A model generated the notes under the pieces. That model was not told the DNA's origin and made no database searches. It was given only the letters and a program-made list of their open reading frames with translations. Of a DNA stretch of 64,000 nt, positions 114 to 60,399 are shown piece by piece. How positions within the stretch are numbered: the stretch's first letter is position 1; every line of letters starts with the position of its first letter. Position numbers and translations under genes: made by a program. Source of the DNA: Octopus sinensis. Taxonomy: Eukaryota. The stretch lies in NCBI RefSeq assembly GCF_006345805.1, contig NC_043015.1:12338001-12402000 (forward strand). Direction: 5' to 3'.

Positions 114-965
114 ATGACTGACATGGATGCCGTACCCGAAAAAAGGAGAAAACGGAGTGACAGTACAGGCGACCATTTCGACGACCGACAAACCGAAGCA
201 GAACTATTGAAATGCTTCGATAAATATGATATGACACATAAAAAGCGAGGTGTCGCCTACATCTTCAACAATGAAACTTTCAGACACTCGGAACTTACTT
301 GTGGTGGATCATCAAAAGACGCACAAGATTTTAAAATGGCATTAATAAGACTTGGATTACAGGAAGAAGATATCCATATTAATACAGATTTAAGTACCGA
401 AGAGATGATTGGGGTTTTGCAAAGGTTTGGCAAAGATAATACTGATATTGATTCTGATTGTTTTATTTGTGCAATACTAAGTTATAGTAACTCAGAAGGT
501 CTAATCTATGGATACGACGATAAAACTGAACTAGAGAAATTACTTTCTTATCTGAGACCCGATCGTTGTCCATGTTTAAAAGGAATACCTAAATTATTCT
601 TTATTCAAGCATGCCGAGGAAGTAAGATGGATTGTGGGGTCGAACAAAATGATGTTGCTTCCTATGGATTTGAAAAAACGTCATCCAAAATTCCAATTAT
701 GGCAGATATGCTGGTTGCTTATTCATCGTGTGATAAATATCCTTCTTTCGGAAATGAAGAAGGAGGCTCGTGGTTTATGCAAACTCTAAGTAAAATGTTG
801 ACGTATTATGGCACTGAACATGAAATCATGACACTTTTAACCGCTGTCTCTAAGTACGTTGCCTCTTTAGGCTCCCGGATTCCGGACAATTCAGCATACA
901 ATGAATATAAACAAATGCCTCACATTACGTCGACATTGACTAAACAACTGAAGTTTGAACCGTAG
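114..965 (+). CDS. Caspase-3/7-like protein, copy 1 (283 aa from first ATG), predicted catalytically inactive; intronless
   Basis: Caspase-fold motifs: KRGVAYIFNNETF, FICAILS, PKLFFIQACRG, ADMLVAYS, GSWFMQ, QMP..STLTKQL. Catalytic His codon is TAT (Tyr, 483-485). The S1 Arg positions read Cys (300-302) and Gly (750-752). The ORF-track start at 30 is a TTG; the first ATG is at 114. Confidence 0.9.
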   Translation: MTDMDAVPEKRRKRSDSTGDHFDDRQTEAELLKCFDKYDMTHKKRGVAYIFNNETFRHSELTCGGSSKDAQDFKMALIRLGLQEEDIHINTDLSTEEMIGVLQRFGKDNTDIDSDCFICAILSYSNSEGLIYGYDDKTELEKLLSYLRPDRCPCLKGIPKLFFIQACRGSKMDCGVEQNDVASYGFEKTSSKIPIMADMLVAYSSCDKYPSFGNEEGGSWFMQTLSKMLTYYGTEHEIMTLLTAVSKYVASLGSRIPDNSAYNEYKQMPHITSTLTKQLKFEP

Positions 966-3046: not shown

Positions 3047-4530
3047 GCTTGTCCCACCCGTAACAAACGAGGTAGACAACCTACCATTACCTCAGCATAC
3101 AAAAGGACCCACTGTGAACGCTGGCAGGGCTGGACGAAGCCAGACTACCTACCTTCAGATGCACACGACATCAGAACTACAATCGCACATGCTATCGGTG
3201 TCAGCCTTAGAACAACGCTTAAAACCCATATTTTAAAGTTGAACAACAAACTGTATAAACAGACGAAAGGCGGTGCTATTGGAGTAGGGATCGCCGGTGA
3301 TGTTGCTAACCTCTTCATGGTATGGTGGGACAGACAGTTTGAACACTGCCTAACGACCCGTAACATCCACTTAGCTATGTACTCTCGATACGTTGACGAC
3401 ATTAACCTTGTCGTGAAACGTAATAGTAATACAGACACAGATATAGACTCTACTAAATGAAGAACAGGTGATGACAGCTATACAACACATAGCTGACTCT
3501 ATCCATAGCAGTATAAAAGTTACCGTAGACTACCCCTCTAAACACCCCAGTAATAGATTACCTGTCCTAGATACTGAGCTGTGGATAGAAAATACTATGG
3601 TTAACGGAACTGTTAAACCCTGTATGCTCCACTCACACTATTGTAAACCTATGGCTAATCCACTGGTAATCCGTAGTGACTCGGCGATGTCGAATACTAC
3701 CAAGCTCAACATCCCAGTGGCAGACTTAGAGTAATGAGGAGTGTATCCCCACTATGCCAACTACAAGAACGACAACACATCCAGCACTACATATTCCGAA
3801 TGCAACGCTCCGGATACACACAATACGATAGAATCAGAGTGTACAAAGGAGCGAAAACAAAATTCGAACGCATTCTAAGAAATGACGAAAACGGTATATG
3901 CCCTCTATACCGCAACAAGTTCTGGAATAGGTTAGAGAGGGACACCAACAAAAGGAATAAAATTAATACTTGGTATGATAACAAGAAATTTCACAGTGTA
4001 ATGTTTGTTGATTCCACACCTAAGAACGAATTAAGTAAGGCATTTAAGAAAATCCTGCGCACAACTGGCGTTAAGATCAAAGTTGGAGAAAAGACAGGTA
4101 GGACTATCAAATCTGTATTATGTAGATCATATCCATTTGATAGAATCACGTGGCGAAATAATTGTGCAGTATGTTCTACAAAACCACATGTGAACTGCAA
4201 AATCAAGAGCACTGTATACCTTATTAAGTGCCAAGAAGGTGCTTGCGCGACTAACCCAGAGTCATACATAGGTGAGACTTCTAGAAGTATCAATGACAGG
4301 TTCAAAGAACATCTGGACAACTACATTGAAAAGAAACCAAACTCCATCTTCTATCAGCATGCTGTAGACTGCCACAAGGGCTCCTTAGGGAGACTTAAGT
4401 TAAACATCTTATCCACACATCCCACTGATGCAATGCTGAGACAGGTCACTGAAGCTGTCTGTATACAAGAATACAAACCCACTCTCAACCGAAAATCCGA
4501 ATGGAGTAACATCCAGATTCCACTCGGGAG
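3047..4530 (+). mobile_element. Penelope-like retroelement (RT + GIY-YIG), 5'-truncated, frameshifted
   Basis: Successive ORF pieces give YKQTKGGAIG, SRYVDDI, LPVLD, then VYLIKC...C...YIGETSRSINDRFKEH (GIY-YIG) and PTLNRKSEW. RT plus GIY-YIG is diagnostic of PLEs. Confidence 0.88.
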
Positions 4531-5138
4531 TAGCATTCTATCAACCCCTCTCTCTCATTTACATGTGGTAATCCATACATACATGTTGAAATGCATGATA
4601 CTAAAATACATATATGCAATTATATATAACCGTATGAGCGTACATTATTTGATAAGTATGTACGTATGTGTAGATGTATATGTGGTGTGTATGTTAGTGT
4701 ATAAGTATGTACATGCATGCACATATGAGTATGTGTAGATATATGTATGTATTGTATATGTATGCATGTAAAAAAAAAGAATAAATAGAATAAAATAAAG
4801 CAAATTTGAATTTTAATCGTTGTCCCTGAAAAGAGTTATATATATATATATATATATATCAACAATTGAGGGTAAAATTAATTAATTAATCAATTTCACC
4901 AAGTGTTCAGTATGTAAAAGGACCATTTAAGGCGAATTCAAAATATTACATTATATAATTAGGGCTTAGTAAAATAAATTACTTTGCCACATACTGAACT
5001 TAGTAGAAATAGCAGCTAAAAAAAATTTTCTTAGCATTTCTACTACTTAAAGAAAATTTCTCTCAGATAATGTTTACTCCAGACAGCTCACGAAGGTGTG
5101 GGGGTAAATACAGAAAAATATCACAAGTACATAGATCG

Positions 5139-14756: not shown

Positions 14757-15457
14757 AATATATCGCTCTTTGTAATTGCTTAGTACAAAGTTAATTCTAA
14801 TTGGCCGATGATGAAACGCATTAAACCAATGAACGTTCTTTTTTCGTCTTTGTTTATGTTTTTCAAGTATAGTGTACCTCGAACTAGATCATCAATTGTT
14901 TTCTTTAATAAAAGAAGAATAGCAGAGTGTTCTACGAATGAGATTTTAGCTTCAAAAGTTAGTGATAGTTATAAATGGAAAGCTTTGAAAAAGAAGGATA
15001 GTCACAACTGGAAAATCTTTTTTAATAAGGGATGGTCATGATTTAAATGCTTTTTAAAGGAAGGATGGTTTCAGTTGGAATGACTTTAAAGAAAGAGCAA
15101 CAGTTAGAAAGACGCTCGTTTCGTTTGTCAGCACATTTTCGCATGCTGAGGGAATAAATCGGATTTCGAGAATTTTCAGAAACTTATTAAAAACGTGCCA
15201 CTTTAGCAGTACATGAACAGTCATCTCCCTTGATGTGGGAATTACTTAGACACACTTAGTTGTTATCGTGGTTTTGTTACTTCGTCATTGGATTATTTCT
15301 TAACAATACAGAGCTTTGCTACTTTCCAACGGTTTTCGAATCTACCCCATTAACAAATAAGAGGTAATTGTTCCAAGTGATTCTGTAATACAAAAGTATA
15401 ACTTTACTCTTTAATATATCATACCAGGAAACTGATTCGGGTCATTTCTTTGATATA
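14105..15457 (+). repeat. Segmental duplication: upstream region shared by caspase copies 2 and 4 (partner ~57725-59196)
   Basis: After (GATA)n both read (G/T)TTAGTGTAG..CTCAAGGCGTAT..CACGCACAGAAGA..CATTTCTGATCC; they also share CCGATGATGAA.CGCATT and AATAGCAG..GAGATTTTAGCTTC blocks. Confidence 0.75.
15000..15457 (+). promoter_or_regulatory. Conserved 5' flank (putative promoter/5'UTR) of caspase copy 2, with perfect 3-unit HSE-type motif at 15164-15178
   Basis: Aligns by eye to the ~470 bp upstream of copies 3 and 4 (shared ATGGTCAT, TTTAAAGA, CGAGAATTTT, ATGAACAGTCA, AACAAATAAG blocks). tTTCg-aGAAt-tTTCa at 15164-15178. Confidence 0.55.
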
Positions 15458-16297
15458 ATGACTACTATGGATGCTCGATATGTAAGTGAACCCATGAGAG
15501 CTGATCAGTTTCATCAGTCAACTGGGGAGGATTTAATGAAATGTTTTAATAAATACGATATGACGCATAAAAGGCGAGGTGTCGCTTACATCTTCAACAA
15601 TGAAAATTTCAAACGATCGGAACTTGCAACTCGTTATGGCTCATCAAAAGATACAGAAGATTTTAAAAAGGCATTAATTAAACTTGGATTCCGTGAAGAT
15701 GATATCAAAGTTTATATGGATGCAACAGTCGAAGAAATGCGCGACGCTTTGAAGCAGTTTGGAAAAAATTCTCATACTGATATTGATTGCTTTATTTGTG
15801 CAATATTGAGTCATGGTGGCCCGGACGACGTTATCTGTGGATACGACGATGTTGTTAAACTAGACGAATTGTTTTCTTACCTGAGACCCAAGTGTTGTCC
15901 ATCTTTAACAGGAGTACCTAAATTATTCTTTGTTGAAGCATCTCGTGGAAGTAAGATTGATGTGGGGGTCGAAAAAACTGATGCTGATTTAATAGGGTAT
16001 GGAAAAAGGACACCCAAAATTCCGGTTATGGCAGATATGTTGGTTGTTTATTCATCGAGTAATGAATATTCTTCTTTCATAAATGAAGATGGTTCGTGGT
16101 TTATGCAAGCTCTAAGTAAAATGTTGATGGAATATGGCAATGAATATGAAATCATGAAACTTTTAACTGCTGTCTCTAACCGTGTTGCCTCTTTAGACTT
16201 CCGAAGTTCGGCTAATTCGGAATACAATGGATGTAAACAAATGCCTCACATTATGTCGACATTGATTAAAGAACTAAAGTTTCAGTCCAAGAACTAA
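15458..16297 (+). CDS. Caspase-3/7-like protein, copy 2 (279 aa), predicted catalytically inactive; intronless
   Basis: Same motifs as the other copies. SHG intact (His 15812-15814) but QACRG reads EASRG (Ser codon 15941-15943). The small-subunit S1 Arg is Ile (16079-16081). Confidence 0.92.
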   Translation: MTTMDARYVSEPMRADQFHQSTGEDLMKCFNKYDMTHKRRGVAYIFNNENFKRSELATRYGSSKDTEDFKKALIKLGFREDDIKVYMDATVEEMRDALKQFGKNSHTDIDCFICAILSHGGPDDVICGYDDVVKLDELFSYLRPKCCPSLTGVPKLFFVEASRGSKIDVGVEKTDADLIGYGKRTPKIPVMADMLVVYSSSNEYSSFINEDGSWFMQALSKMLMEYGNEYEIMKLLTAVSNRVASLDFRSSANSEYNGCKQMPHIMSTLIKELKFQSKN

Positions 16298-16902
16298 ATG
16301 TACCGTTTACTTTAATATCAACACTAAAGTTTTACGTAAATATATGTATACAAATACAAAATGTATGTGCTTTTACATATAATTACTTGACCTAAAATGT
16401 AACATTTTAAATCAATTATTTTCTATAATTGTTAATATGATTCCAATCTTAATTTGGTTTCTTTTTAAAGTGTTTAAAAGAATATATTTATTTGTCATTG
16501 CTTTCATCATTATATCATCACAAGTATATATTTTATTTTTATCCCTACATATTATTAATTTTATATGAATGTTTACAGACATAAATTTTTTATTCTATTT
16601 TTTATTTTATTTTATTCGAATTAAATTATAGCTTGCACAGTAAGGTCCGGCGAATCTATATACACATATGTATACTTATCTGTTAAAATTAAAATATAAT
16701 ATTCAGTATCGAACTATGATAAAGTTATTTAGAGGCCTGATGATTGGGGTTGCATTTTAAGAAATGTTCCTATAAAGCGCTGCGTGCTTAAGGAACCATA
16801 AAAGAACCTCAAGAAACACGTGTAGCAGAGAAATGAGTAGTAAGTATTAAATTAAAATTCTTTTATATGGTGTGATGATGGGGACTACTATCTCTAAATA
16901 AC

Positions 16903-18242: not shown

Positions 18243-19348
18243 TGTACTGGCTTCATGGAGGCATGGCGTGGATTCGATCCTCGATCGCCAAATTTCACTT
18301 TTCAACAGCACTTTTCCTGCAGAGGAAACAATGGTTGATTGCAATGGTTGATTGACCCTTCTAACCTCTTCTAGAATTGAGATGACAGACTCACCCCCAA
18401 CGAAATCTATTGTCTTTGCAATATACTCTTTTACTTGTTTCAGTCATTTGACTGCGGCCATGCTGGAGCACCGCCTTTAATCGAGCAACTCGATCCTAGG
18501 ACTTATTCTTTTGTAAGCCCAGTACTTATGCTATCGGTCTCTTTTGCCGAACCGCTAAGTAACGGCGACATAAACACACCAGCATCGGTTGTCAAGCAAT
18601 GCTAGGGGGAGAAACACACACACCCATATATATATATACATATATACGACGGGCTTCTTTTCAGTTTCCGTTTACCAAATCCACTCACAAGGCTTTGGTC
18701 GGCCCGAGGACATAGTAGAAGACACTTGCCCAAGATGCCACGCAGTGGGACTGAACCCGGAACTATGTGATTGGTAAACAAGCTACTTACCACACAGCCA
18801 CTCCTGCGCCTATATGTTTATCTTTCTAACTAGTTTTGTATAGTTATAAATACTAGAACTCCGAAAGCCAAGATCAGTTAGTGAACAGAGACCAACTCGA
18901 GATGGCCACAAACAGACAGCCATTTTTTGAGACAAACGGCCAAGGAAGAATACAATCAATTTCTATGAGATACAACATCCCTCGACTCTCTAACTTTCAC
19001 TAGTTCATCTTCTTTTCTCTACAACATCACTCTGTCTCTACCTTTCTTACTGCTAGAATTACAAATGTGCTCATACTTATACAAGAAGAAATTAACTTTC
19101 TTAACCTTGAATGCTTTAACACTTATATTATTATACACACCTTGCCCTTCGAGGCATGGCATTATATTGAGTAACAGTAAAATAAATAAATTTAAAGTCA
19201 ACATCAACTTTTATCATTGTTCTTCTTTCATCTTGCACATCTGCAACAGCAACACCCGTTACACTCGCTAACAACCGACAACCACAATTACCATCACAAT
19301 TACCGTTACACTGGTGACCACTGACTCCACTTTAACAATACCGTTACA
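18243..19348 (-). mobile_element. Solo LTR (TG...CA, 4-bp TSD CGAT) with nested SINE A at 18424-18810
   Basis: Reverse-complement homologue of 24570-25316; CGAT at 18239-18242 and 19349-19352; empty site with single CGAT at 36086-36089. Confidence 0.85.
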
Positions 19349-36249: not shown

Positions 36250-36731
36250 CGTGATGGTCATAATTGGAACGCTTTCAAAAAGTTGGATGATCACATTTGG
36301 AAAATTTTCAAATAAGGAATGGTCATAATTTTAAACGAGAGGATGGTTTTGGTTGGAATGCCTTTAAAGAAAGAGCGACAGTTTTATATATCCGCGCATT
36401 TTTGCGTACTGAATGAATAGATCGGAGTTATTTTCCATTTCGAGAATTTTCAGAAAATTAGAAACACGTGACACTATAAGAATATATGAACAGTCACCTC
36501 CCTTGGATTGAGAAATACCTAGATACACTGAGTTGTTATCGTATTTTTATTAATACCCCTTCGGATTATTTGTTAACGATACAGACCCTAGCCACTTTCC
36601 AAGGATTTTCGAATTTACCCCATAAACAAATAAGTGGCAATTTTTCCAAGTGATTTCGTAATACGAAAGTATTGTTTTACTCTTTAATATATCAAGCCGG
36701 AACTAGTTTCAAGTAATCTCACTGCTGTTAA
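36250..36731 (+). promoter_or_regulatory. Conserved 5' flank of caspase copy 3; HSE-type motif 36438-36452, E-box CACGTG 36465-36470
   Basis: Homologous to the flanks of copies 2 and 4; identical 15-mer TTTCGAGAATTTTCA to copy 2. Confidence 0.55.
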
Positions 36732-37559
36732 ATGGCTGCTCAACGTGCAAGTGTAACAGGTGGTCAGAGTCATCACCCAAGTAAGGCAGATTTAAAGAAA
36801 TGGTTCGATAGATATGATATGACGCATAAAAAGCGAGGTGTCGCTTACATCTTCAACAACGAAACTTTCAAACACCCGAAACTTAAAACTCGTTATGGCT
36901 CATCAAAAGATACAGAAGATTTTAAAAAAGCATTAATTAAACTTGGATTCCGTGAAGATGATATCAAAGTTTATACGGATGCAACAGTCGAAGAAATGCG
37001 CGACGCTTGGAAGCAGTTTGGAAAAAATTCTCATACTGATATTGATTGCTTTATTTGTGCAATATTGAGTCATGGTGACTCGGACGACATTATCTGTGGA
37101 TACGACGGTACTGTCAAACTAGACGAATTGTTTTCTTACCTGAGACCTGATCGTTGCCCATCTTTAAAAGGAATACCTAAATTATTCTTTATTCAAGCAT
37201 GTCGTGGAACTGCATCTGATTCTGGAGTCGAAAAAACTGATGCTGATTACATAGACCATGAAGAAATGTCACTCACAATTCCAGTTATGGCAGATATGTT
37301 GGTTGTTTATTCATCATGTAATAAACATGCCTCTTACAGAGATGAAAAGGCTGGCACGTGGTTTATGCAAGCCTTAAGTGAAATGTTGATGGAATATGGC
37401 ACCAAATATGAAATCATGAAACTTTTAACTGCTGTCTCTAACCGTGTTGCCTCTTTAGACCTCCAAAGTTCGGCTAATTCGGAATGCAAAAGTTGTAAAC
37501 AAATGCCTCAGATTAATTCGACATTGATTAAAGAACTAATGTTTGAACCAAAAAAATAA
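36732..37559 (+). CDS. Caspase-3/7-like protease, copy 3 (275 aa), catalytic residues intact; intronless
   Basis: TRYGS (S1 Arg), SHG (His 37071-37073), QACRG (Cys 37200-37202), linker VEKTD/ADYID and SYRD..GTWF (second S1 Arg) are all present. Confidence 0.93.
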   Translation: MAAQRASVTGGQSHHPSKADLKKWFDRYDMTHKKRGVAYIFNNETFKHPKLKTRYGSSKDTEDFKKALIKLGFREDDIKVYTDATVEEMRDAWKQFGKNSHTDIDCFICAILSHGDSDDIICGYDGTVKLDELFSYLRPDRCPSLKGIPKLFFIQACRGTASDSGVEKTDADYIDHEEMSLTIPVMADMLVVYSSCNKHASYRDEKAGTWFMQALSEMLMEYGTKYEIMKLLTAVSNRVASLDLQSSANSECKSCKQMPQINSTLIKELMFEPKK

Positions 37560-38499
37560 ATGTACATTTTTATTTTAATATAGTGCGAGATCTCTTAATA
37601 GAAACAGTCCTTTTTCTTGTAAAAATTTGTTTTGCATGCATGCACACGCACGCGCGTGTGCATGCGAGGTAAACAAATTTAAAATCTCATATTTTCACAA
37701 ATACAAGCATTTTCTACATATAATACCTGAACCAAAGATATTAAATAGATAAATGTAATATTTTAAACTAATTAGTTTCTATAATTGTTAATATGATCAC
37801 AAACTTGAATTAGCCTGTAACTTTTTAAGATGTTTAACTGAACCTATTCCCTACCATTCATTCTTAAAAGGAATACATTTATGCACGCACACACATGTAT
37901 ATATGAAATATACAGTATATACACACACACATGAAATATATAAATATTCTATATTTCAAAATAACCTTTCTCTCTGAAAACTGAACTAACATTGTCTTAT
38001 ATACAACTAAATATGAACATAATGTTAGAAAAAAAGATAGCTTTATCTTAGAGTGAAGGGGTATCTCCACAAGTGCCATATTCCACCTACACCAACAATG
38101 TGTCGTGGGGGGGGGTTCGCCACTCGTATACTGGCGAGAGGGACACAAATAATCAACCTCAGAATCACAGAGGCATCATATTTCATTAAGAAGAAAGTAT
38201 CTAGCCTTAACTGCTGGAATGGGCTCGACTGCTGAAATTACATCTACTACTTCCAGAGACTTTAACCAGTACCAGCAATGACCACTACAAAAAGCAAATG
38301 GAAAGAACTTCAGATGAAGGATCTTTGATCCAGAAGCGCTCACGCGGATAAACCTAACCTAACACCTAGTAACAAGGCTATCCACTGATTACAGACCACA
38401 TGTAAGGTCTATCTTTTTATCTACATTCCTATCTGTCCATCTATCTAACTACCCATCTCTCTGTATATCTGTGTATTTCATCTCTTTACTTATCCGTCT

Positions 38500-42899: not shown

Positions 42900-43968
42900 T
42901 CTAGGACAGCACTCTTCACTCTTTCAAATGACATCTGGTGTACCACAGGGATCTGTTCTTGGCCCCCTTTTATTTGTAGCATATATTAATGACATAGATG
43001 CCAACTTAAAGAATGCCACAGTGCTGAAATATGCAGATGACATCAAGCTGTACCTCAAAATAAAGAGGACAGATCCTGTACACTATAGATCTTTATTGCA
43101 ATCAGACCTGGACGCAATGCAGCAATGGATCATGGACTGGCAACTCAAGCAGGATGTGGACAAATGTACCACCATGCATTTTGGGAGGAAAAACCCAGCG
43201 TCTACTTACTCCCTCCACAACACTAATCTCAAAAGGTCTTCTTGTGAACGTGACCTGGGTGTTATTGTCGACAGTGATTTGCGTTGGACAAAACACATTG
43301 CTAAAATTGCCAAGAAGGCTGAGGGTGCCTTGGAATCACTTACCAAGTCCTTTGTGAGCCGCTCTCCGGCTATCTATCTGAAGCTTTATATAGCTATGGT
43401 GCGGCCTCGCCTGGAGTTTGCATCACCGGTCTGAGACCCCTATCTTACCCAGGATATTAATCGTCTGGAAATCGTTCAACGACGTGCAACCAAGAGAATA
43501 CCCTCTATCAGGCATTTGCCATATTCTGAACGCCTTACTTCCCTGGGCATGGATACACTGAAACTCCGACGTCTGGCAGACACCCATAAAATTATTAACC
43601 ATCTTACAAACAATAACTCTGAGCACCTTTTCAAATTCGACCTGTCTAACACCCGTGGACATGTTTATAAAGCCAGAAAACAGCACAGTTCCCATGTCTT
43701 TCGGAAACATTTTTTCACGCTAAAAGTTGCTGAATTATGGAACAAACTGTCGGCATCAGTTGTTAGTTGTCGGAGCACTGCATCCTTCAAAACTTCCATG
43801 CTTCCTGAGATTCGCCAACACTACACCTGATTTTCTCCCCTCCATACACACGCAAGCTTGTATCTGATTCATACACTGTTCACTCCCCAGACATTTGTAC
43901 ATTGCTGCATATGCTTTATACGCACTTTCGACAAGTTGTGGTGCACCCGAGCACTGTATACAATAATT

Positions 43969-50086: not shown

Positions 50087-52376
50087 AATAGACCAGTGTT
50101 ATTTGCAATGAAGCTCAACGAAACACGAAGAACTAGAAAAGCACTCGGAGAGCGCAGACCTCCGCCAAGCAGCTCATTTCCACCCATATACACGCATGTA
50201 CCCGTATATACCGCAATCAGTTTCTTTATACAGTTGAAAATCCATTATCCGATACTCGTGGGACCGAGATTGTTGCAGATTTTTTTATTTTTCTAATTTC
50301 GGAGTGTTTTATTAAAAAAAAATTGCATCTACAAAACGGAACAGTTTGAGGATGGAAACCAGGTCTAAACGCAATAGCTTATAGACAAACTCTGAATGTA
50401 GTTCTATATAAATCTTTGATAATTTTTTTATACCTAAGACCATCAGAAATGTTAAGATATCAGCCTCTACCCATGTTGCCATGCTTTGATTCAAAGGTTA
50501 CAACATAGATTAGATTACTTAGATAAGTTTCCATCGAAGTTTACTCAGGCCCTGTCTAATTTAATAGCACCACCTGAAAGAGATACACAGTCAGCTCTGG
50601 GGAACCGTAGCCCATTCAAGCAGAGGATTATTGTTTTCAGAGATATATCTGGGTGTGGGTGGTTTATCTGGTATTTGTTCGGGCTAATCATCTAGGGATC
50701 GTTTGAATGCCATGAAGTCACTTTCCTCCTTTATGTGTGTCTGGCACGAAGTTGAAGAGACCAGGGCCAATTGAGGTGAATTAGTTCTACCATAGTGTTG
50801 TGATACGACATGAACATTTCTGTAGTGGACGGATAGCACGGGAGCCAAGCCTCGGGCGAATTTTAAAGATGGGCAATGTTGATGGAATATTTTCCACATC
50901 ATACAGATGATATGGAGCTCAAAGCAACGGTGGAGGGAGCAAAGCCTGAGCTTTTTGAGTCGATCCCAATAGTCAAGGCTTGTCATGTCATCCTCCGCAG
51001 ACCTCCGCCAAGCAGCTCATTTTATGATAGACATGCGAATAAGTTACTAATAGAGAAATGAAAATAAACTTTGGAAACAGCAACGCCACCATAGGTTACG
51101 TTGAAACGCTGAACGTGGCTTCAAGGGAGATAATCAAAGAACGTAACACTTTATGTAAAGTAAACATTACAAATGAAAAATCCTTCAAGAATACATAAAA
51201 ATTCCCGGATCACTACCAAAATTTCATTGTCTGTTCCTCGTGTCATTACCAACTTTTTCTGCAAGTTTCATCAAATACCGTTCACAACTTTTTGAGTTAT
51301 TTTGCATAGAGACGGACAAACCAACGCCGATGAAAACATAATCTCTTTCTTTGGCGGAGGTAAAAAATCTGAAATAAGCTGTTATTTTCTAATTTGCTAA
51401 GTATTGTGAAATCAATAATCCAGAACTGAACACAGAACGCGAATACCTCAAGAGTTGTCTCCCCTCCTTTACGAAATAAAATATCTGTAAACGGATAACA
51501 TTGTTGACTTTGTTTCTCATAGATTATTTGCTTTTTCTCTTAATGTGCTCCGTTTTATAAAAGCCATCTCTAAAGAAAATTAAATTATTTACCTTCTACT
51601 ATTAAACGTATAGAGAAATGCTTACTATTCATAGCTGTCTGTTGATTGGCTAAAATTACCCAAATTTTCCTACTTTAACTCCAAATAACATCAGTAAATA
51701 AAATAAAGTAATTGGCTGATTGTAATCAAAATTCAGAGTTGCATCGATACAGCAAAATTGAAAGCAATCTGAACAAAATTAAAGGGGGCTCATTTTGCGA
51801 ATGAAAAAGACTTGATCTGGACTCCAAATTTATTTACCGTTACTTTAATATATATCATACCTCGAAAATAACGAAAAAAGTATGCACTTCAAAGCTGAGA
51901 AGTTTCAAGCAATCTACTACTGGCCCCCAAACAGATTACAATCAGAATACACAGGACCAAGTGATAATGCAATCCTTGAGTCAGACCCTGTGTATGACCA
52001 AGTAATCCACCTGAGGAATGTTGCATCACTTCATGTCCATATTACGAAGATGGCAACACTGTGCAGGCGAGTTGTAGGTTGGATTTTGAGATCATTCCGG
52101 ACAAGGAAATAGGATATTAAGCTACTCTTGTGGAGAAGATTTGTTCTCAGTTGCCCAAATTACTGCTCCCAGCAGTGGTTGGTACAAAGCATCAAACTAA
52201 CTATGGAACTCGAGGAAACCCAACATCACTACACAAAGAAGAATGACTCAGTGCAACAAACGAGCTATCAGGTGAGGCTAGAAGAACTGAGACTATTAAG
52301 ATAGAGGGGGCTTGCCCAACACACACGCGTTAGCTACTACACACATTTTTTTTCTCTCCTTGTTTTTTTCTGTGTA

Positions 52377-52414
52377 TCTTTCTGTCGAAGAGCGTAGGCT
52401 CGAAACGTAAAAGA
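52377..52414 (+). ncRNA. Minimal hammerhead-like motif with variant core (CUGUCGA-A)
   Basis: Stem I TCTTT/AAAGA, stem II GAGC-gtag-GCTC, GAAA, ACGT, GUA; the core deviates from CUGANGA. Confidence 0.45.
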
Positions 52415-52696
52415 CTTTTTTCTATTCCTGAGCGCTATACTAATACATTTGTTTGTTTGTACACCACCTGCCTTCGTCATTTGTTTATTTTCGTAAACTT
52501 TCCCTTTATATATATATATATATATATAATCAATAATAATAAAGGGTAAAATCAATGAATTAATTAATAATTAATAATTTCACCGAGTAGTTTGGTATGT
52601 TAAAAGAACTATTATCGGTAAACTTATACAAAAATTCTATAATTATGAGTATAATTATAATTAAGGTTCAGCAACGAGTTCGATTCCAAGCAGTGA

Positions 52697-53798
<1,102 letters not shown>

Positions 53799-54342
53799 AG
53801 TACCAGGGTGTGGCTCTCATGGCTTCTGATCTTAACTGATTGGAAGTGTTATCATGTACATTGTTTTGTCTTGGTATAAAAGATGGGCTACAACAAATAT
53901 TCTGCTCAATACCACAGATTTGCTTGTCAGTTGTTTGACCTTAACCAGTTGAGCATGTCCCTTAGTGGCTGACCATATGTGCATCTCTGATCACGAGCAG
54001 AAGTTGTAGGGGGGCATCATAGCCATGTGTTGAGAGGGATTCTTTGGGGTTTGAATAGTTCACCTCTGGAAACATGGGTGGTTCTTTCAACATCCTTAAA
54101 CAACTCTTATTCAGGGACCGTTTCAGCGGGATGGGCTACTCAACCTGAAGAAAATTCTAACTGGGCCCCACCTGCAAGGTCATGTGCTGTTTATCTTGAT
54201 ATGAGATCACCATGTCGCGCACATATGGTTGTGATGCATGTGCCTGGTGTACCCTTATCGGACGGGTAGTCATGATGGGTATATTGGGCTTCGTATATTT
54301 TACCCCAGTGTCACTTTGATGGCATGAACTGCTCTCTCACTC
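53799..54342 (-). mobile_element. Second copy of the (TTA)n-embedded ~550-bp repeat
   Basis: Reverse complement of 44037-44580. Confidence 0.75.
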
Positions 54343-54440
<98 letters not shown>

Positions 54441-54528
54441 TAATAATGATAATGATAATGATAATAATAAAATAATAATGATAATGATAATAATATATAA
54501 TAATATAATAATAATAATAATAATAATA

Positions 54529-54567
<39 letters not shown>

Positions 54568-54569
54568 TA

Positions 54570-54630
<61 letters not shown>

Positions 54631-54631
<1 letters not shown>

Positions 54632-54815
54632 GACGACGACGGCGGCGGCGGCGAAAGCGACGGCGGCAGCGGCGAAAGCGACGGCGGCGGAGGCGACGGC
54701 GACGGCGAAAGCGACGGCGAAAGCGGCGGCGACGGCGACGGCGAAAGCGGCGGCGACGGCGACGGCGAAAGCGGCGGCGACGGCGACGGCGAAAGCGGCG
54801 GCGACGACGACAACG
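54631..54815. repeat. GC-rich trinucleotide array with a 24-bp higher-order unit (GCGGCGGCGACGGCGACGGCGAAA)
   Basis: About three exact units plus variants. Confidence 0.85.
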
Positions 54816-54945
54816 ATGACATCGAAAAATACCTTGGGAATGAGAACTCCTGAAGAAGGCTGGAGGGTATATCAGCCGAAATGTGTTAACAACAAACATG
54901 ATAAGGGCAAATATCCGTCGAATGTAAATAATGTAAATAACGTAC

Positions 54946-55003
<58 letters not shown>

Positions 55004-58566: not shown

Positions 58567-58739
58567 TAGTGTACCTAGCACAACAATATCCAATGTATTT
58601 AAAAAAAAAAAAAATAGCAGTGTACTCTGAGTGAGATTTTAGCTTCGAAAAGACGAGGTGGCCGTTTGAAACACTCTTAAAAAGTCTGTAGTTATGCATG
58701 GAGCATTTTAAAACAGTCACGTAATAATTATAAATGGAA

Positions 58740-59196
58740 CACATTGAAAATACAGGATGGTCACGACTGGAAATTTTTTTAAAATAAAGAATGGTCATGA
58801 TTTAAACGCTTTTAAAAGAGAGAATTGTTTTTGGGGTTAGATTGACCTTAAAGAGAGAGGGGCAGTTCGAAAGTCGCTCGTTTTGTGCAACCACGCGTCT
58901 TTTCGTACTGAATGAACTGACAAAAGTCATTTTCGATTCCGAGAATTTTGAGAAAATTCGCAACAGGTGGCGCTATAGGAGTACATGAACAGTCACCGCC
59001 CTTGAGTTGGGATAACTTCCAAGATTCTGATGCATTAAGATGCGATCGGGTTTTTATTAATTCTCGTTTGGAGTATTTCTTGACGATACAGACCCTAATC
59101 ACTTTTCTCGGATTATCGACTTTACCACCATTAACAAATAAGTACTAATTTTACTGAGTGATACCGGATTTGGATTCAGGTCATTTCTTTGATATA
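58740..59196 (+). promoter_or_regulatory. Conserved 5' flank of caspase copy 4 (HSE-type motif degenerate, 58937-58951)
   Basis: Homologous to the flanks of copies 2 and 3; the aligned 15-mer TTCCGAGAATTTTGA has two mismatches. Confidence 0.5.
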
Positions 59197-59981
59197 ATGA
59201 CTACTACAGATGCTCGGTGTGTGAGTCTAACTGGCGATAAGAATCGTCGACCAATTGAGGAAGATTTAATGAATTGTTTCCATAAATATGAAATGACACA
59301 TAAAAAGCGAGGTGTTGCCTACATCTTCAACAATGAAACTTTCGAAGACTCGTCACTAAAAACTCGTCTTGGCTCATCAAAAGACTCAGACGATTTTAAA
59401 AATGCATTAATTAAACTTGGATTCGAAGAAGATGATATCCACCTTTATACAGACGCAACAACCGAGGAAATGCTCGAGGCTTTGGAGCTTTTTGGTAAAG
59501 AAAATTCTGATATTGATATTGATTGCTTTATTTGTGCAATTTTAAGTCATGGTGGGCAAGACGATATTATCTATGGATACGAAGGTCCTATAGAGCTAGA
59601 AAAATTGCTTTCTTGCCTGAGACCCGATCGTTGTGCACCTCTCACAGGAATACCTAAATTATTCTTTATTCAAGCATGTCGTGGAACTACACCGGATATT
59701 GGAGTCGAAAAAAAAGATGCTGATTACATAGACCATGATGAAAGGTCACCTAAAATTCCAGTTATGGCAGATATGTTGGTTGTTTATTCATCTGTTAATA
59801 AATATCCTTCTTTCAGAGATGAAGGAGAAGGTTCGTGGTTTATGCAAGTTTTAAGTAAAATTTTGACAGAATATGGCACTCAGTGTGAAATCATGAAACT
59901 TTTAACTGCTGTCCTAACGTGGTTGCCTCTTGAGACTTCCGAAGTTCGGTTAATCGGAATACAATGGATGTAAACAATGCC
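59197..59981 (+). CDS. Caspase-3/7-like protease, copy 4, catalytic residues intact; 3' end indel-ridden and cut by assembly gap
   Basis: TRLGS, SHG (59548-59550), QACRG (59677-59679) and SFRD..GSWF present. The last ~70 nt before the N gap match the copy 2 3' end except for several 1-nt indels. The ORF-track start at 59158 is a GTG. Confidence 0.85.
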
Positions 59982-60081
59982 NNNNNNNNNNNNNNNNNNN
60001 NNNNNNNNNNNNNNNNNNNNNNNNNNNNNNNNNNNNNNNNNNNNNNNNNNNNNNNNNNNNNNNNNNNNNNNNNNNNNNNNN
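59982..60081. other. Assembly gap (100 N)
   Basis: Run of exactly 100 Ns, typical of a placeholder for a gap of unknown size. Confidence 0.99.
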
Positions 60082-60399
60082 CTTGGCCTCCCAACATTAA
60101 CCTAAAACCCTAACCGTAGTACAGAAATGTTTGAAATTTTGGCCACTGAATCATAATGTCCGTATTTTTCCGCATATTTAGAAAAAAACTTCTCAAAAAA
60201 AAATTTTGGGAAATTTATTTTCAGAATCATTTAATCCGTATTTTCGCATTATTTGAAAAAAAAAAAACGTTTAAAATAAAAGAAATGGGGGTGGGGATTG
60301 GTAACTTAGAAATGTCGATTTTTGCCAATTTTTTTGCTGATTCGTATTCCCCGTAGTCGAACGGGGGCGGGGGTTGTGTCGAAAAAAAATGTTTTAAGG

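What the first reader, a model, noticed from the sequence alone, without database searches (positions are those of the whole stretch)
15935..16081. Copy 2: QACRG converted to EASRG plus loss of the small-subunit S1 Arg
Seen: CAA->GAA (Gln->Glu), TGT->TCT (Cys->Ser, 15941-15943) and AGA->ATA (Arg->Ile, 16079-16081), while His, the first S1 Arg and the linker Asp (VEKTD) are kept. Established: the Gln and Arg line the S1 pocket, and Cys->Ser is the classical inactivating or substrate-trap mutation. Inference: a dominant-negative dimer partner or binder that can still be processed at the linker; residual Ser-His activity with altered P1 preference is a remote possibility.
Basis: partly seen in the sequence, partly recalled or inferred. 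Interest (0 to 1): 0.7.

Follow-up and report, generated by a model that had tools for sequence, protein, structure and literature searches.

The report
Conserved dead caspase in octopus cluster
One gene in an octopus tandem cluster of cell-death proteases has lost its catalytic cysteine and its substrate pocket, yet has stayed an intact gene in three species, so it is most likely a non-cutting regulator of its active neighbours.

Summary
Window ORF 15458-16297 (Octopus sinensis chromosome CM016877.1) is an intronless caspase-3/7-like gene. It reads EASRG where its neighbours read QACRG, and Ile where they have the small-subunit S1 Arg. The His, the first S1 Arg and the linker Asp are kept.

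The changes are neither private nor simultaneous:
- Cys->Ser (TCT) is shared with the syntenic orthologs in O. vulgaris and O. bimaculoides.
- O. bimaculoides still has Gln (QASRG) and lost the Arg by a different substitution (Gly).
- Gln->Glu came later.

Evidence that the gene is maintained: dN/dS 0.59 (canonical copy 4: 0.45), only in-frame indels, and a 98%-conserved 100-nt block before the ATG. The model is a confident caspase fold, and the dimer strand is identical to that of an active paralog.

Two other cluster members are also "dead": copy 1 lost the His, and copy 5 is EASRG through an independent AGT Ser codon. EASRG also recurs in a hemichordate and two insects.

My reading is a selectively maintained pseudo-caspase (decoy or regulator), a new member of a known kind. 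The destroyed S1 pocket argues against a substrate trap. Expression and partner binding remain untested.

The parts
15458..16297 (+). Copy 2: single-exon coding sequence of a caspase-3/7-like pseudo-caspase, 279 aa
   Evidence: ORF list; Pfam PF00656 E 2.7e-50 over residues 40-273; best solved relatives are caspase-7 and caspase-3; AF2 pLDDT 80, pTM 0.79; Foldseek caspase-7 E 1e-28
15935..15937 (+). Glu160 codon GAA (= Gln283 of the S1 pocket). CAA in copies 3 and 4 and in the O. bimaculoides ortholog
15941..15943 (+). Ser162 codon TCT replacing the catalytic Cys (TGT). Same codon in the O. vulgaris and O. bimaculoides orthologs
16079..16081 (+). Ile208 codon ATA replacing the small-subunit S1 Arg (AGA). 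GGA (Gly) in the O. bimaculoides ortholog
16064..16066 (+). Glu203 in loop L3. Lys in 12 of 14 canonical paralogs, Glu in all three copy-2 orthologs
15632..15634 (+). Arg59, the retained first S1 Arg (= Arg179)
15812..15814 (+). His119, the retained dyad His (= His237)
15968..15982 (+). VEKTD linker motif. Asp175 aligns with caspase-7 Asp198 and lies in the only internal low-confidence (flexible) segment, 169-182
15358..15457 (+). Proximal upstream block, 96 of 98 aligned bases identical between O. sinensis and O. bimaculoides, against about 82-88% further upstream. Contains GT and AG splice-like signals (unverified)
14962..15457 (+). Upstream part of the duplicated unit, shared with copies 3 and 4 at 75-81% identity
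15628..15818 (+). Gene-conversion tract shared with copy 3 (36887-37077): 3 mismatches in 191 nt. It ends 116 nt before the Glu160 codon
114..965 (+). Copy 1: QACRG kept but His->Tyr, Arg179->Cys and Arg341->Gly. A second pseudo-caspase
36732..37559 (+). Copy 3: canonical Arg/His/QACRG/Arg paralog and a likely active partner
59197..59973 (+). Copy 4: canonical active site. The 3' end has two 1-bp deletions next to a 100-N gap (59983-60082)

Best explanation
Copy 2 is a selectively maintained pseudo-caspase. It is a tandem duplicate of an octopus effector (caspase-3/7-like) caspase that lost its nucleophile (Cys->Ser) before O. bimaculoides and O. sinensis diverged. It later lost its Asp-binding S1 pocket step by step: Arg341->Ile or Gly, Lys203->Glu and, in the sinensis/vulgaris lineage, Gln283->Glu. 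Shown: the residue changes, their age and order, orthology and synteny, weak but detectable purifying selection, and a confidently predicted caspase fold with a flexible linker that still carries the processing Asp. Inferred: the protein does not cleave or hold Asp substrates. It acts through protein-protein contacts, most likely by pairing through its unchanged beta6 dimer strand with the active neighbours (copies 3 and 4) and/or by competing with them for upstream activators or inhibitors. This would tune their activity up or down, as cFLIP(L) and the mosquito decoy caspase do. The Glu is most simply a charge partner for the now unliganded Arg59, plugging a disused pocket.
For: Fold: Pfam caspase domain and caspase-7/3 as best solved relatives; AF2 pLDDT 80.3 and pTM 0.79, with only residues 1-18 and the linker 169-182 disordered; Foldseek caspase-7 TM 0.9. 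Orthology: P0002 (O. bimaculoides) and P0024 (O. vulgaris) form a 99%-bootstrap clade with copy 2 and sit in the same cluster order. Shared change: the Ser codon is TCT in all three species. Selection: dN/dS 0.59 (CI 0.35-0.98, p 0.024) against 0.45 for canonical copy 4. The chance of keeping the ORF free of stop codons under neutral substitution is 0.01-0.05. The CDS has only two indels, both 3 nt. The 100 nt before the ATG are 96/98 identical between species. Pattern of change: only six lineage-specific departures from conserved paralog residues, four of them at the active site (V159, S162, E203, I/G208), while the beta6 strand KQMPHIMSTLIKELKF is identical to that of O. bimaculoides copy 4. 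The linker Asp is near-invariant across the family. Gene conversion with copy 3 has homogenised 15628-15818 but has not restored Cys in any species. Precedents: TbMCA4 (Cys->Ser, inactive, processed by an active paralog), cFLIP(L), and insect decoy caspases.
Against: There is no direct evidence of transcription or protein. No transcript contig encodes the exact protein, and no copy-2 peptide or accession appears in the held, truncated octopus mucus proteome tables. The dN/dS interval nearly touches 1, and after the conversion tract alone it is not significant (0.66, p 0.17). The whole cluster evolves fast. Dimerisation and regulation are inferred from sequence only.
Confidence: 0.6

Rival explanations
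1. Copy 2 is a functionless duplicate drifting towards pseudogene status. The active-site changes are simply decay that has not yet produced a stop codon.
For: dN/dS is high across the cluster (0.45-1.24), and the upper confidence bound for copy 2 is 0.98. No expression evidence was found. Neighbouring copy 4 shows frameshifts in this assembly.
Against: The ORF is intact in three species at dS 0.17 (P 0.01-0.05 from substitutions alone). Only in-frame indels occur in the CDS, whereas the flanks carry 19-, 9- and 2-nt indels. The proximal upstream 100 nt are far more conserved than neutral DNA. Protein divergence is only about 1.4 times that of canonical copy 4 (dN 0.102 versus 0.075). Changes concentrate at the active site while the core and dimer strand are kept.
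Confidence: 0.15
2. Copy 2 is a decoy or sink rather than a dimer partner. It would be a cleavable pseudo-substrate or bait that soaks up upstream activating caspases, IAP-type inhibitors or pathogen-encoded caspase inhibitors, protecting or timing the active paralogs.
For: It keeps a processing site (VEKTD|A) that would expose an N-terminal Ala. The family is a lineage-specific expansion that evolves fast, as is typical of immune or conflict genes. Three of the five cluster members are inactivated by different routes.
Against: Nothing tested here separates this from the dimer-partner model. Asp at position 2 of the new N-terminus (ADLI) is not a typical IAP-binding motif (own knowledge).
Confidence: 0.2
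3. Copy 2 is an active hydrolase that uses Ser162-His119, possibly helped by Glu160, with a new non-Asp P1 preference.
For: His119-Gly120 and the RG of the pentapeptide are retained in all three species. Glu and Ser are strongly associated across caspases (E&S 14, E&C 4, Q&S 6, Q&C 263). His is kept in five EASRG lineages.
Against: The only biochemically tested Cys->Ser protein of this fold, TbMCA4, has no activity on a full P1 library and regains it on Ser->Cys. In 2011 no Ser-nucleophile peptidase with a caspase fold was known. Residue 283 lines S1 and is not placed to orient His237 (established caspase structures, own knowledge). The O. bimaculoides ortholog lacks the Glu, and some EASRG proteins lack the His.
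Confidence: 0.05
4. The three changes are sequencing or assembly errors, or an individual's private mutations.
For: The assembly has gaps and probable errors nearby (copy 4).
Against: The same TCT, GAA and ATA codons occur in the independent O. vulgaris assembly GCA_951406725.2, and TCT also occurs in O. bimaculoides GCA_001194135.2.
Confidence: 0.01

Closest known systems
cFLIP(L), the vertebrate pseudo-caspase (PMC7586951)
   Same: A caspase-fold paralog that arose by duplication next to its active relatives. It lacks the nucleophile, its inactivating substitutions are conserved, it keeps a linker Asp cleaved by the active partner, and it works by heterodimerising and can inhibit or activate.
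   Different: cFLIP has tandem DED prodomains and derives from initiator caspases 8/10. Both dyad residues are replaced (Arg and Tyr). Copy 2 has a short prodomain, is effector-like, keeps His and has Ser. It is not an ortholog.
Dipteran caspase-like decoy molecules (Aedes aegypti CASPS18; Bryant et al. 2010, as cited in PMC3141678 and PMC7768685)
   Same: Enzymatically inactive caspase homologs that arose by recent gene duplication, carry substitutions at critical residues, and regulate a paralogous active caspase.
   Different: They belong to a different phylum and an independent duplication. The original paper was not available here, so residue-level comparison is from memory only. The mosquito decoy enhances its paralog; the direction of the effect in octopus is unknown.
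Trypanosoma brucei metacaspase 4 (PMC3220528)
   Same: It has the same chemistry: Ser in place of the catalytic Cys with His retained. It was shown to be inactive, Ser->Cys restores activity, it is processed by an active paralog, and it is biologically functional.
   Different: It is a metacaspase (Arg/Lys-specific, Ca-dependent, monomeric, lipid-anchored), not an animal caspase. Its specificity pocket was not dismantled.
Laboratory Cys->Ser/Ala caspase mutants (e.g. procaspase-7 C186A, PDB 1gqf)
   Same: Loss of the nucleophile leaves a folded, dimeric caspase. 1gqf (QAARG) is the top sequence match in the PDB.
   Different: These engineered proteins keep Gln283 and Arg341 and therefore still bind substrate (traps). 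Copy 2 has lost both.
C. elegans CSP-2/CSP-3 (own knowledge, not checked here)
   Same: Caspase homologs without activity that bind the CED-3 zymogen and restrain its auto-activation.
   Different: They are truncated or partial caspase homologs rather than full-length p20-p10 proteins with a point-mutated active site.

Membership tests
Caspase family (peptidase C14A, Pfam PF00656) | Significant full-length match to the caspase domain profile | tested here: met
   PF00656 E 2.7e-50, profile positions 1-232 of 233
Caspase family (peptidase C14A, Pfam PF00656) | Caspase fold with p20 and p10 parts joined by a flexible linker | tested here: met
   AF2 pLDDT 80.3 with a disordered linker at 169-182; Foldseek caspase-7/3/6, TM 0.9, E 1e-28. 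This is a prediction, not a solved structure.
Caspase family (peptidase C14A, Pfam PF00656) | Catalytic dyad His237-Cys285 | tested here: not met
   His119 is present; Cys is replaced by Ser162 (TCT)
Caspase family (peptidase C14A, Pfam PF00656) | Asp-specific S1 pocket Arg179/Gln283/Arg341 | tested here: not met
   Arg59 is kept; Gln->Glu160; Arg->Ile208
Effector (caspase-3/7-like) subfamily | Short prodomain without CARD or DED; closest to caspase-3/7 | tested here: met
   About 35 residues precede the domain and no other Pfam domain is found; the top PDB matches are caspase-7 and caspase-3
Pseudo-caspase / decoy caspase | Full caspase-fold paralog lacking a catalytic residue, derived by duplication of an active caspase | tested here: met
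   Tandem cluster with canonical copies 3 and 4; lineage-specific octopus clade
Pseudo-caspase / decoy caspase | Inactivating change conserved and gene maintained by selection, rather than a decaying pseudogene | tested here: met
   Ser TCT in three species, dN/dS 0.59 (p 0.024), ORF-retention P 0.01-0.05, in-frame indels only, conserved upstream block. The support is moderate, not strong.
Pseudo-caspase / decoy caspase | Expressed as RNA and protein | tested here: inconclusive
   RefSeq models exist. No exact-match transcript contig. No accession or peptide in the truncated proteome tables.
Pseudo-caspase / decoy caspase | Binds and modulates an active paralog | not testable with these tools
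   Only indirect support: the beta6 strand is identical to that of O. bimaculoides copy 4
cFLIP orthologs | Tandem DED prodomain and Arg/Tyr in place of His/Cys | tested here: not met
   No DED; His is kept and Ser replaces Cys
Dead (processed or unitary) pseudogene | Stop codons or frameshifts disrupting the reading frame | tested here: not met
   Uninterrupted 279-281-codon ORFs in three species

The most novel reading that the evidence does not exclude
EASRG is not just wreckage. It may be a recurrent, selected active-site state of caspases, reached independently at least twice within this octopus cluster and again in a hemichordate, a midge and a katydid. In it, Glu283 plus Ser285 would create a new function. 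At the extreme this would be the first Ser-nucleophile hydrolase built on the caspase fold, with a non-Asp specificity. More modestly it would be a convergently evolved 'self-plugged', substrate-blind scaffold.
Probability: 0.07. Interest if true: 0.85.

Novelty: new member of a known kind. Interest (0 to 1): 0.5.

Why it matters
Pseudoenzymes that regulate their active relatives are a recognised theme, but very few pseudo-caspases are characterised: cFLIP, a mosquito decoy and the nematode CSPs. Here a single 70-kb octopus cluster holds three independently inactivated caspases next to two canonical ones. The three routes are His loss, Cys->Ser via TCT, and Cys->Ser via AGT. All are conserved in order across species.

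This makes a compact natural system for asking how dead paralogs tune effector caspases. The system is testable with recombinant proteins, and the order of mutational steps is already resolved: nucleophile first, pocket later.

The strong association of Glu283 with Ser285 across distant phyla suggests a general rule: once the nucleophile is gone, the Asp-binding pocket is neutralised. This could be tested directly in human caspase-3/7. The finding also warns annotators that these genes, named 'caspase-1-like' or 'caspase-7', are not proteases.

Tried and rejected
1. A motif-centred profile search (40-aa fragments around EASRG) was meant to list all Ser-for-Cys caspases. It found only 8 candidates, all short QV-type fragments, so it was uninformative.
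2. Full-text searches for 'EASRG' and 'QASRG' returned only unrelated hits. There is no prior description in the held library.
3. The original mosquito decoy paper (PMC2902568) is not held. I relied on how two other papers describe it.
4. In the supplements of the octopus mucus proteome I searched for the cluster's UniProt accessions and for the copy-2 tryptic peptides LFFVEASR and TDADLIGYGK. Nothing was found, but the tables are truncated, so this is inconclusive. The listed caspase accession A0A7E6FHF5 could not be resolved.
5. A lookup of transcript contigs encoding the exact protein found only the genome record.
6. An Rfam scan of the window found nothing.
7. The CDS of the O. bimaculoides copy-3 ortholog (P0005) is not on record, so no copy-3 ortholog dN/dS could be computed.
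8. The first catalytic-site survey used a wrong column mapping and was redone.
9. Gene conversion from copy 5 or from P0011 as the source of Glu/Ile in copy 2 was rejected, because the neighbouring codons differ: GCC AGT AGA in copy 5, and ATT with a different context in P0011.
10. Rescue of the Cys by A-to-I RNA editing was rejected, because TCT contains no A.

Full report
**What the window is**

The window is eukaryotic DNA: about 36% GC, with many microsatellites. An exact-protein lookup places it on Octopus sinensis chromosome CM016877.1, at about 12,338,001-12,402,000 (taxonomy). It holds four intronless caspase ORFs on the + strand and no further caspase relics:

| Copy | Coordinates |
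|---|---|
| 1 | 114-965 |
| 2 | 15458-16297 |
| 3 | 36732-37559 |
| 4 | 59197-59973 |

The duplicated unit is about 500 nt of upstream sequence plus the coding sequence (14962-16318 ~ 36251-37581 ~ 58721-59981). A fifth member, P0015, lies about 7 kb beyond the right end of the window.

**Check of the observation**

- Copy 2 reads GAA GCA TCT CGT GGA (EASRG) at 15935-15949 and ATA (Ile208) at 16079-16081.
- Copies 3 and 4 have CAA, TGT and AGA at the three changed codons.
- The protein is a full-length caspase domain (PF00656, E 2.7e-50).
- Its best solved relatives are caspase-7 and caspase-3 (E 1e-44).
- That alignment puts Glu160, Ser162 and Ile208 on caspase-7 Gln184, Cys186 and Arg233. 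It puts Arg59, His119 and Asp175 on Arg87, His144 and the processing site Asp198.

**The changes are old, stepwise and not private**

The closest proteins in the 5.8-billion-protein collection are from Octopus.
- The O. vulgaris ortholog (P0024) has the same EASRG and Ile.
- The O. bimaculoides ortholog (P0002, 81% identity) has QASRG and Gly at the Arg position.

Orthology is supported in two ways. The three proteins form a clade with 99% bootstrap. The O. bimaculoides cluster also has the same gene order: copy 1 ortholog at 21.770 Mb, copy 2 at 21.784, copy 4 at 21.822 and copy 5 at 21.837.

The codons give the order of events:
- The Ser codon is TCT in all three species, so TGT->TCT predates their split.
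- The Arg codon AGA became ATA in the sinensis/vulgaris lineage and GGA in O. bimaculoides. Each is one step from AGA but two steps from the other, so the Arg was most parsimoniously lost twice, after the Cys.
- CAA->GAA occurred only in the sinensis/vulgaris lineage.

**Is it a gene or a decaying copy?**

- Between O. sinensis and O. bimaculoides, copy 2 has dS 0.174, dN 0.102 and dN/dS 0.59 (bootstrap CI 0.35-0.98; Fisher p 0.024). The catalytically canonical copy 4 has dN/dS 0.45.
- Random placement of the observed or neutral number of substitutions leaves the ORF free of stop codons in only 1-5% of simulations.
- The two indels in the CDS are both 3 nt, whereas the 5' flank carries indels of 19, 9 and 2 nt.
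- The 100 nt before the ATG are 96/98 identical between the species, against about 82-88% further upstream.
- The signal is moderate. Downstream of the conversion tract alone, dN/dS is 0.66 and not significant.

**Where the protein has and has not changed**

Only six positions separate all three copy-2 orthologs from residues conserved in at least 80% of 14 canonical octopus paralogs: P21S, I159V, C162S, K203E, R208I/G and E276Q. Four of these line the active site.

The beta6 dimer-interface strand KQMPHIMSTLIKELKF is identical to that of O. bimaculoides copy 4. The linker Asp is nearly invariant across the family.

AlphaFold2 gives pLDDT 80.3 and pTM 0.79. Low confidence is confined to residues 1-18 and the linker 169-182. 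The model superposes on caspase-7, -3 and -6 (TM about 0.9, E 1e-28).

The picture is a folded caspase protomer with a cleavable linker and an intact dimer edge. Its substrate groove has lost two positive charges and gained two negative ones.

**Gene conversion**

Copies 2 and 3 differ at only 3 of 191 positions in 15628-15818 (= 36887-37077). Over the slightly wider interval 15640-15830, copy 2 differs from its own O. bimaculoides ortholog at 23 positions. A 68-nt identical run has P 0.004. O. sinensis and O. vulgaris copy 2 differ in two further patches, 15670-15717 and 15847-15909. One of these brings copy-3-like residues (DRC...LKG) to within about 15 codons of the pentapeptide.

Despite this traffic, the Ser has not been converted back to Cys in any species. 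That is compatible with selection for the dead state, but it does not prove it.

**The neighbourhood: three dead copies, three routes**

- Copy 1 keeps QACRG but has Tyr at the dyad His (Cys in the other two species), Cys at Arg179 and Gly at Arg341 (Glu in O. vulgaris). Its dN/dS is 1.17 and its ORF is intact in all three species.
- Copy 5 is EASRG in all three species with both S1 Arg residues kept, and its dN/dS is 1.24.
- The copy 5 Ser codon is AGT in O. sinensis and O. bimaculoides (O. vulgaris DNA was not fetched). AGT is two steps from TCT, and copy 2 plus copy 5 are never sisters (0 of 100 bootstraps). Cys->Ser therefore happened independently twice in one cluster.
- The joint probability that all three dead copies stayed open by chance is of order 1e-5 (product of the values).

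**EASRG elsewhere**

An exhaustive HMMER scan of 1.84 billion representatives and a profile search found EASRG or EASKG in:
- Glandiceps talaboti, a hemichordate, with two paralogs;
- Diamesa hyperborea, a chironomid midge;
- Anabrus simplex, a katydid, with two proteins;
- an unnamed contig carrying QASRG and EASRG domains in tandem;
- a divergent octopod-like Logan contig, P0021, with Ser codon TCC and the His lost.

The hemichordate and insect proteins fall outside the octopus clade in the tree; P0021 falls inside it, in a different subfamily.

Across the 311 aligned domains held locally, the counts at positions 283 and 285 are:

| Residue 283 | Cys at 285 | Ser at 285 |
|---|---|---|
| Gln | 263 | 6 |
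| Glu | 4 | 14 |
| other | 14 | 3 |

The odds ratio is 108 (p 5e-15). Two caveats apply: the rows are not phylogenetically independent, and the queries themselves carried EASRG. Collapsed to lineages, this is about six E&S lineages against two E&C.

Glu is therefore strongly, though not exclusively, coupled to loss of the Cys. In copy 2 the order is demonstrably Ser first, then Glu.

My inference rests on the known geometry of the caspase S1 pocket, where Arg179, Gln283 and Arg341 jointly hold the P1 carboxylate. Once no substrate is turned over, a carboxylate at 283 would neutralise the buried Arg(s) and close the pocket. I could not measure this because model coordinates are not returned.

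**Mechanism**

The best-supported reading is a pseudo-caspase. It is catalytically inert and no longer able to bind Asp at P1, so it is not a substrate trap. It probably still dimerises and is still cleaved at VEKTD175|A, and so modulates its active neighbours.

The rivals are neutral decay, a sink for activators or inhibitors, and a Ser-based hydrolase. They are weighed in the structured fields. The hydrolase idea is disfavoured by the one experimental precedent: T. brucei MCA4 (Cys->Ser, His kept) is inactive on a complete P1 library, is reactivated by Ser->Cys, and is processed by an active paralog (PMC3220528).

**Comparison with what is known**

Functionally, copy 2 resembles three known proteins:
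- cFLIP(L) (PMC7586951);
- the dipteran caspase-like decoys (as described in PMC3141678 and PMC7768685);
- TbMCA4.

It is not a member of the cFLIP family: it has no DEDs and its substitutions differ. It is a caspase homolog that fails two defining features of active caspases.

I found no paper describing octopus pseudo-caspases or the EASRG/QASRG motif. Surveys of cephalopod and mollusc caspases list pentapeptide variants such as QACQP, QSCRG and QACRS, but none with Ser.

**Verdict**

I file this as a new member of a known kind (pseudo/decoy caspases). The unusually clear evolutionary history and the convergent EASRG state are the parts that deserve follow-up. Interest 0.5.

Noticed in passing
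window 114-965: Copy 1 is a second pseudo-caspase made by a different route. QACRG is kept, but the dyad His is Tyr (TAT; Cys in O. bimaculoides and O. vulgaris), Arg179 is Cys and Arg341 is Gly. The ORF is intact in three species, with dN/dS about 1.17.
   Followed up: partly
L005:1501-2349 (about 7.2 kb beyond the window's right end); O. bimaculoides L006:1501-2388: Copy 5 of the cluster is EASRG in all three species with both S1 Arg residues kept. Its Ser codon is AGT in O. sinensis and O. bimaculoides (TCT in copy 2), so the Cys was lost independently. dN/dS is about 1.24 and the ORF is intact.
   Followed up: yes
window 59900-60082: Copy 4 has a canonical active site. Two 1-bp deletions (about 59913 and about 59953) shift the frame just before a 100-N scaffold gap (59983-60082). 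This is either assembly error at a contig end or real pseudogenisation. The O. bimaculoides ortholog is intact.
   Followed up: partly
window 15628-15818 and 36887-37077: Gene-conversion tract between copies 2 and 3 (3 mismatches in 191 nt). In O. vulgaris the exchange differs: copy 3 carries copy-2-like residues after SHG, and copy 2 carries copy-3-like DRC..LKG.
   Followed up: yes
window 15458-37559 (RefSeq gene span, L001:3001-25102): RefSeq 'caspase-1-like isoform X2' (P0001) equals the copy 2 protein except for its last four residues, which are those of copy 3 about 21 kb downstream. No GT-AG intron fits the junction, so the model looks like a chimeric artefact of the tandem repeat.
   Followed up: partly
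L009:4955-5785 and L009:561-1319 (O. sinensis CM016888.1): Two tandem paralogs on another chromosome read EACRG. At least one (P0011) has Ile (ATT) at the Arg341 position with Cys and His intact. It is a candidate active caspase with a non-Asp S1 pocket.
   Followed up: partly
proteins P0085/P0180, P0041, P0162/P0032, P0185: EASRG or EASKG caspases occur in a hemichordate (Glandiceps talaboti), a midge (Diamesa hyperborea), a katydid (Anabrus simplex) and an unnamed contig with QASRG and EASRG in tandem. Glu283 is strongly associated with Ser285 across caspases.
   Followed up: partly
window 15358-15457 (and the equivalent stretches before copies 3 and 4): A block of about 100 nt before the ATG is nearly invariant between species and is shared by the paralogs. 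It includes AAGAG|GTAATT and ATACCAG|G, which look like splice donor and acceptor sites of a small 5'-UTR intron. Copy 4 lacks about 44 nt of it.
   Followed up: partly
window 42928-43434 and 3734-4738: There is a reverse-transcriptase fragment (PF00078, E 2e-14). A 334-aa ORF with no Pfam hit contains a 'YIGETSRS..RFKEH' stretch that resembles a GIY-YIG nuclease motif by eye, as in Penelope-like elements (unconfirmed). Interspersed repeats, e.g. 18424-18800, recur many times in the window.
   Followed up: no
window 52000-55000: An extreme low-complexity AT-rich block (GC 0.19) produces long spurious ORFs of poly-Tyr, poly-Ile and poly-Leu.
   Followed up: no
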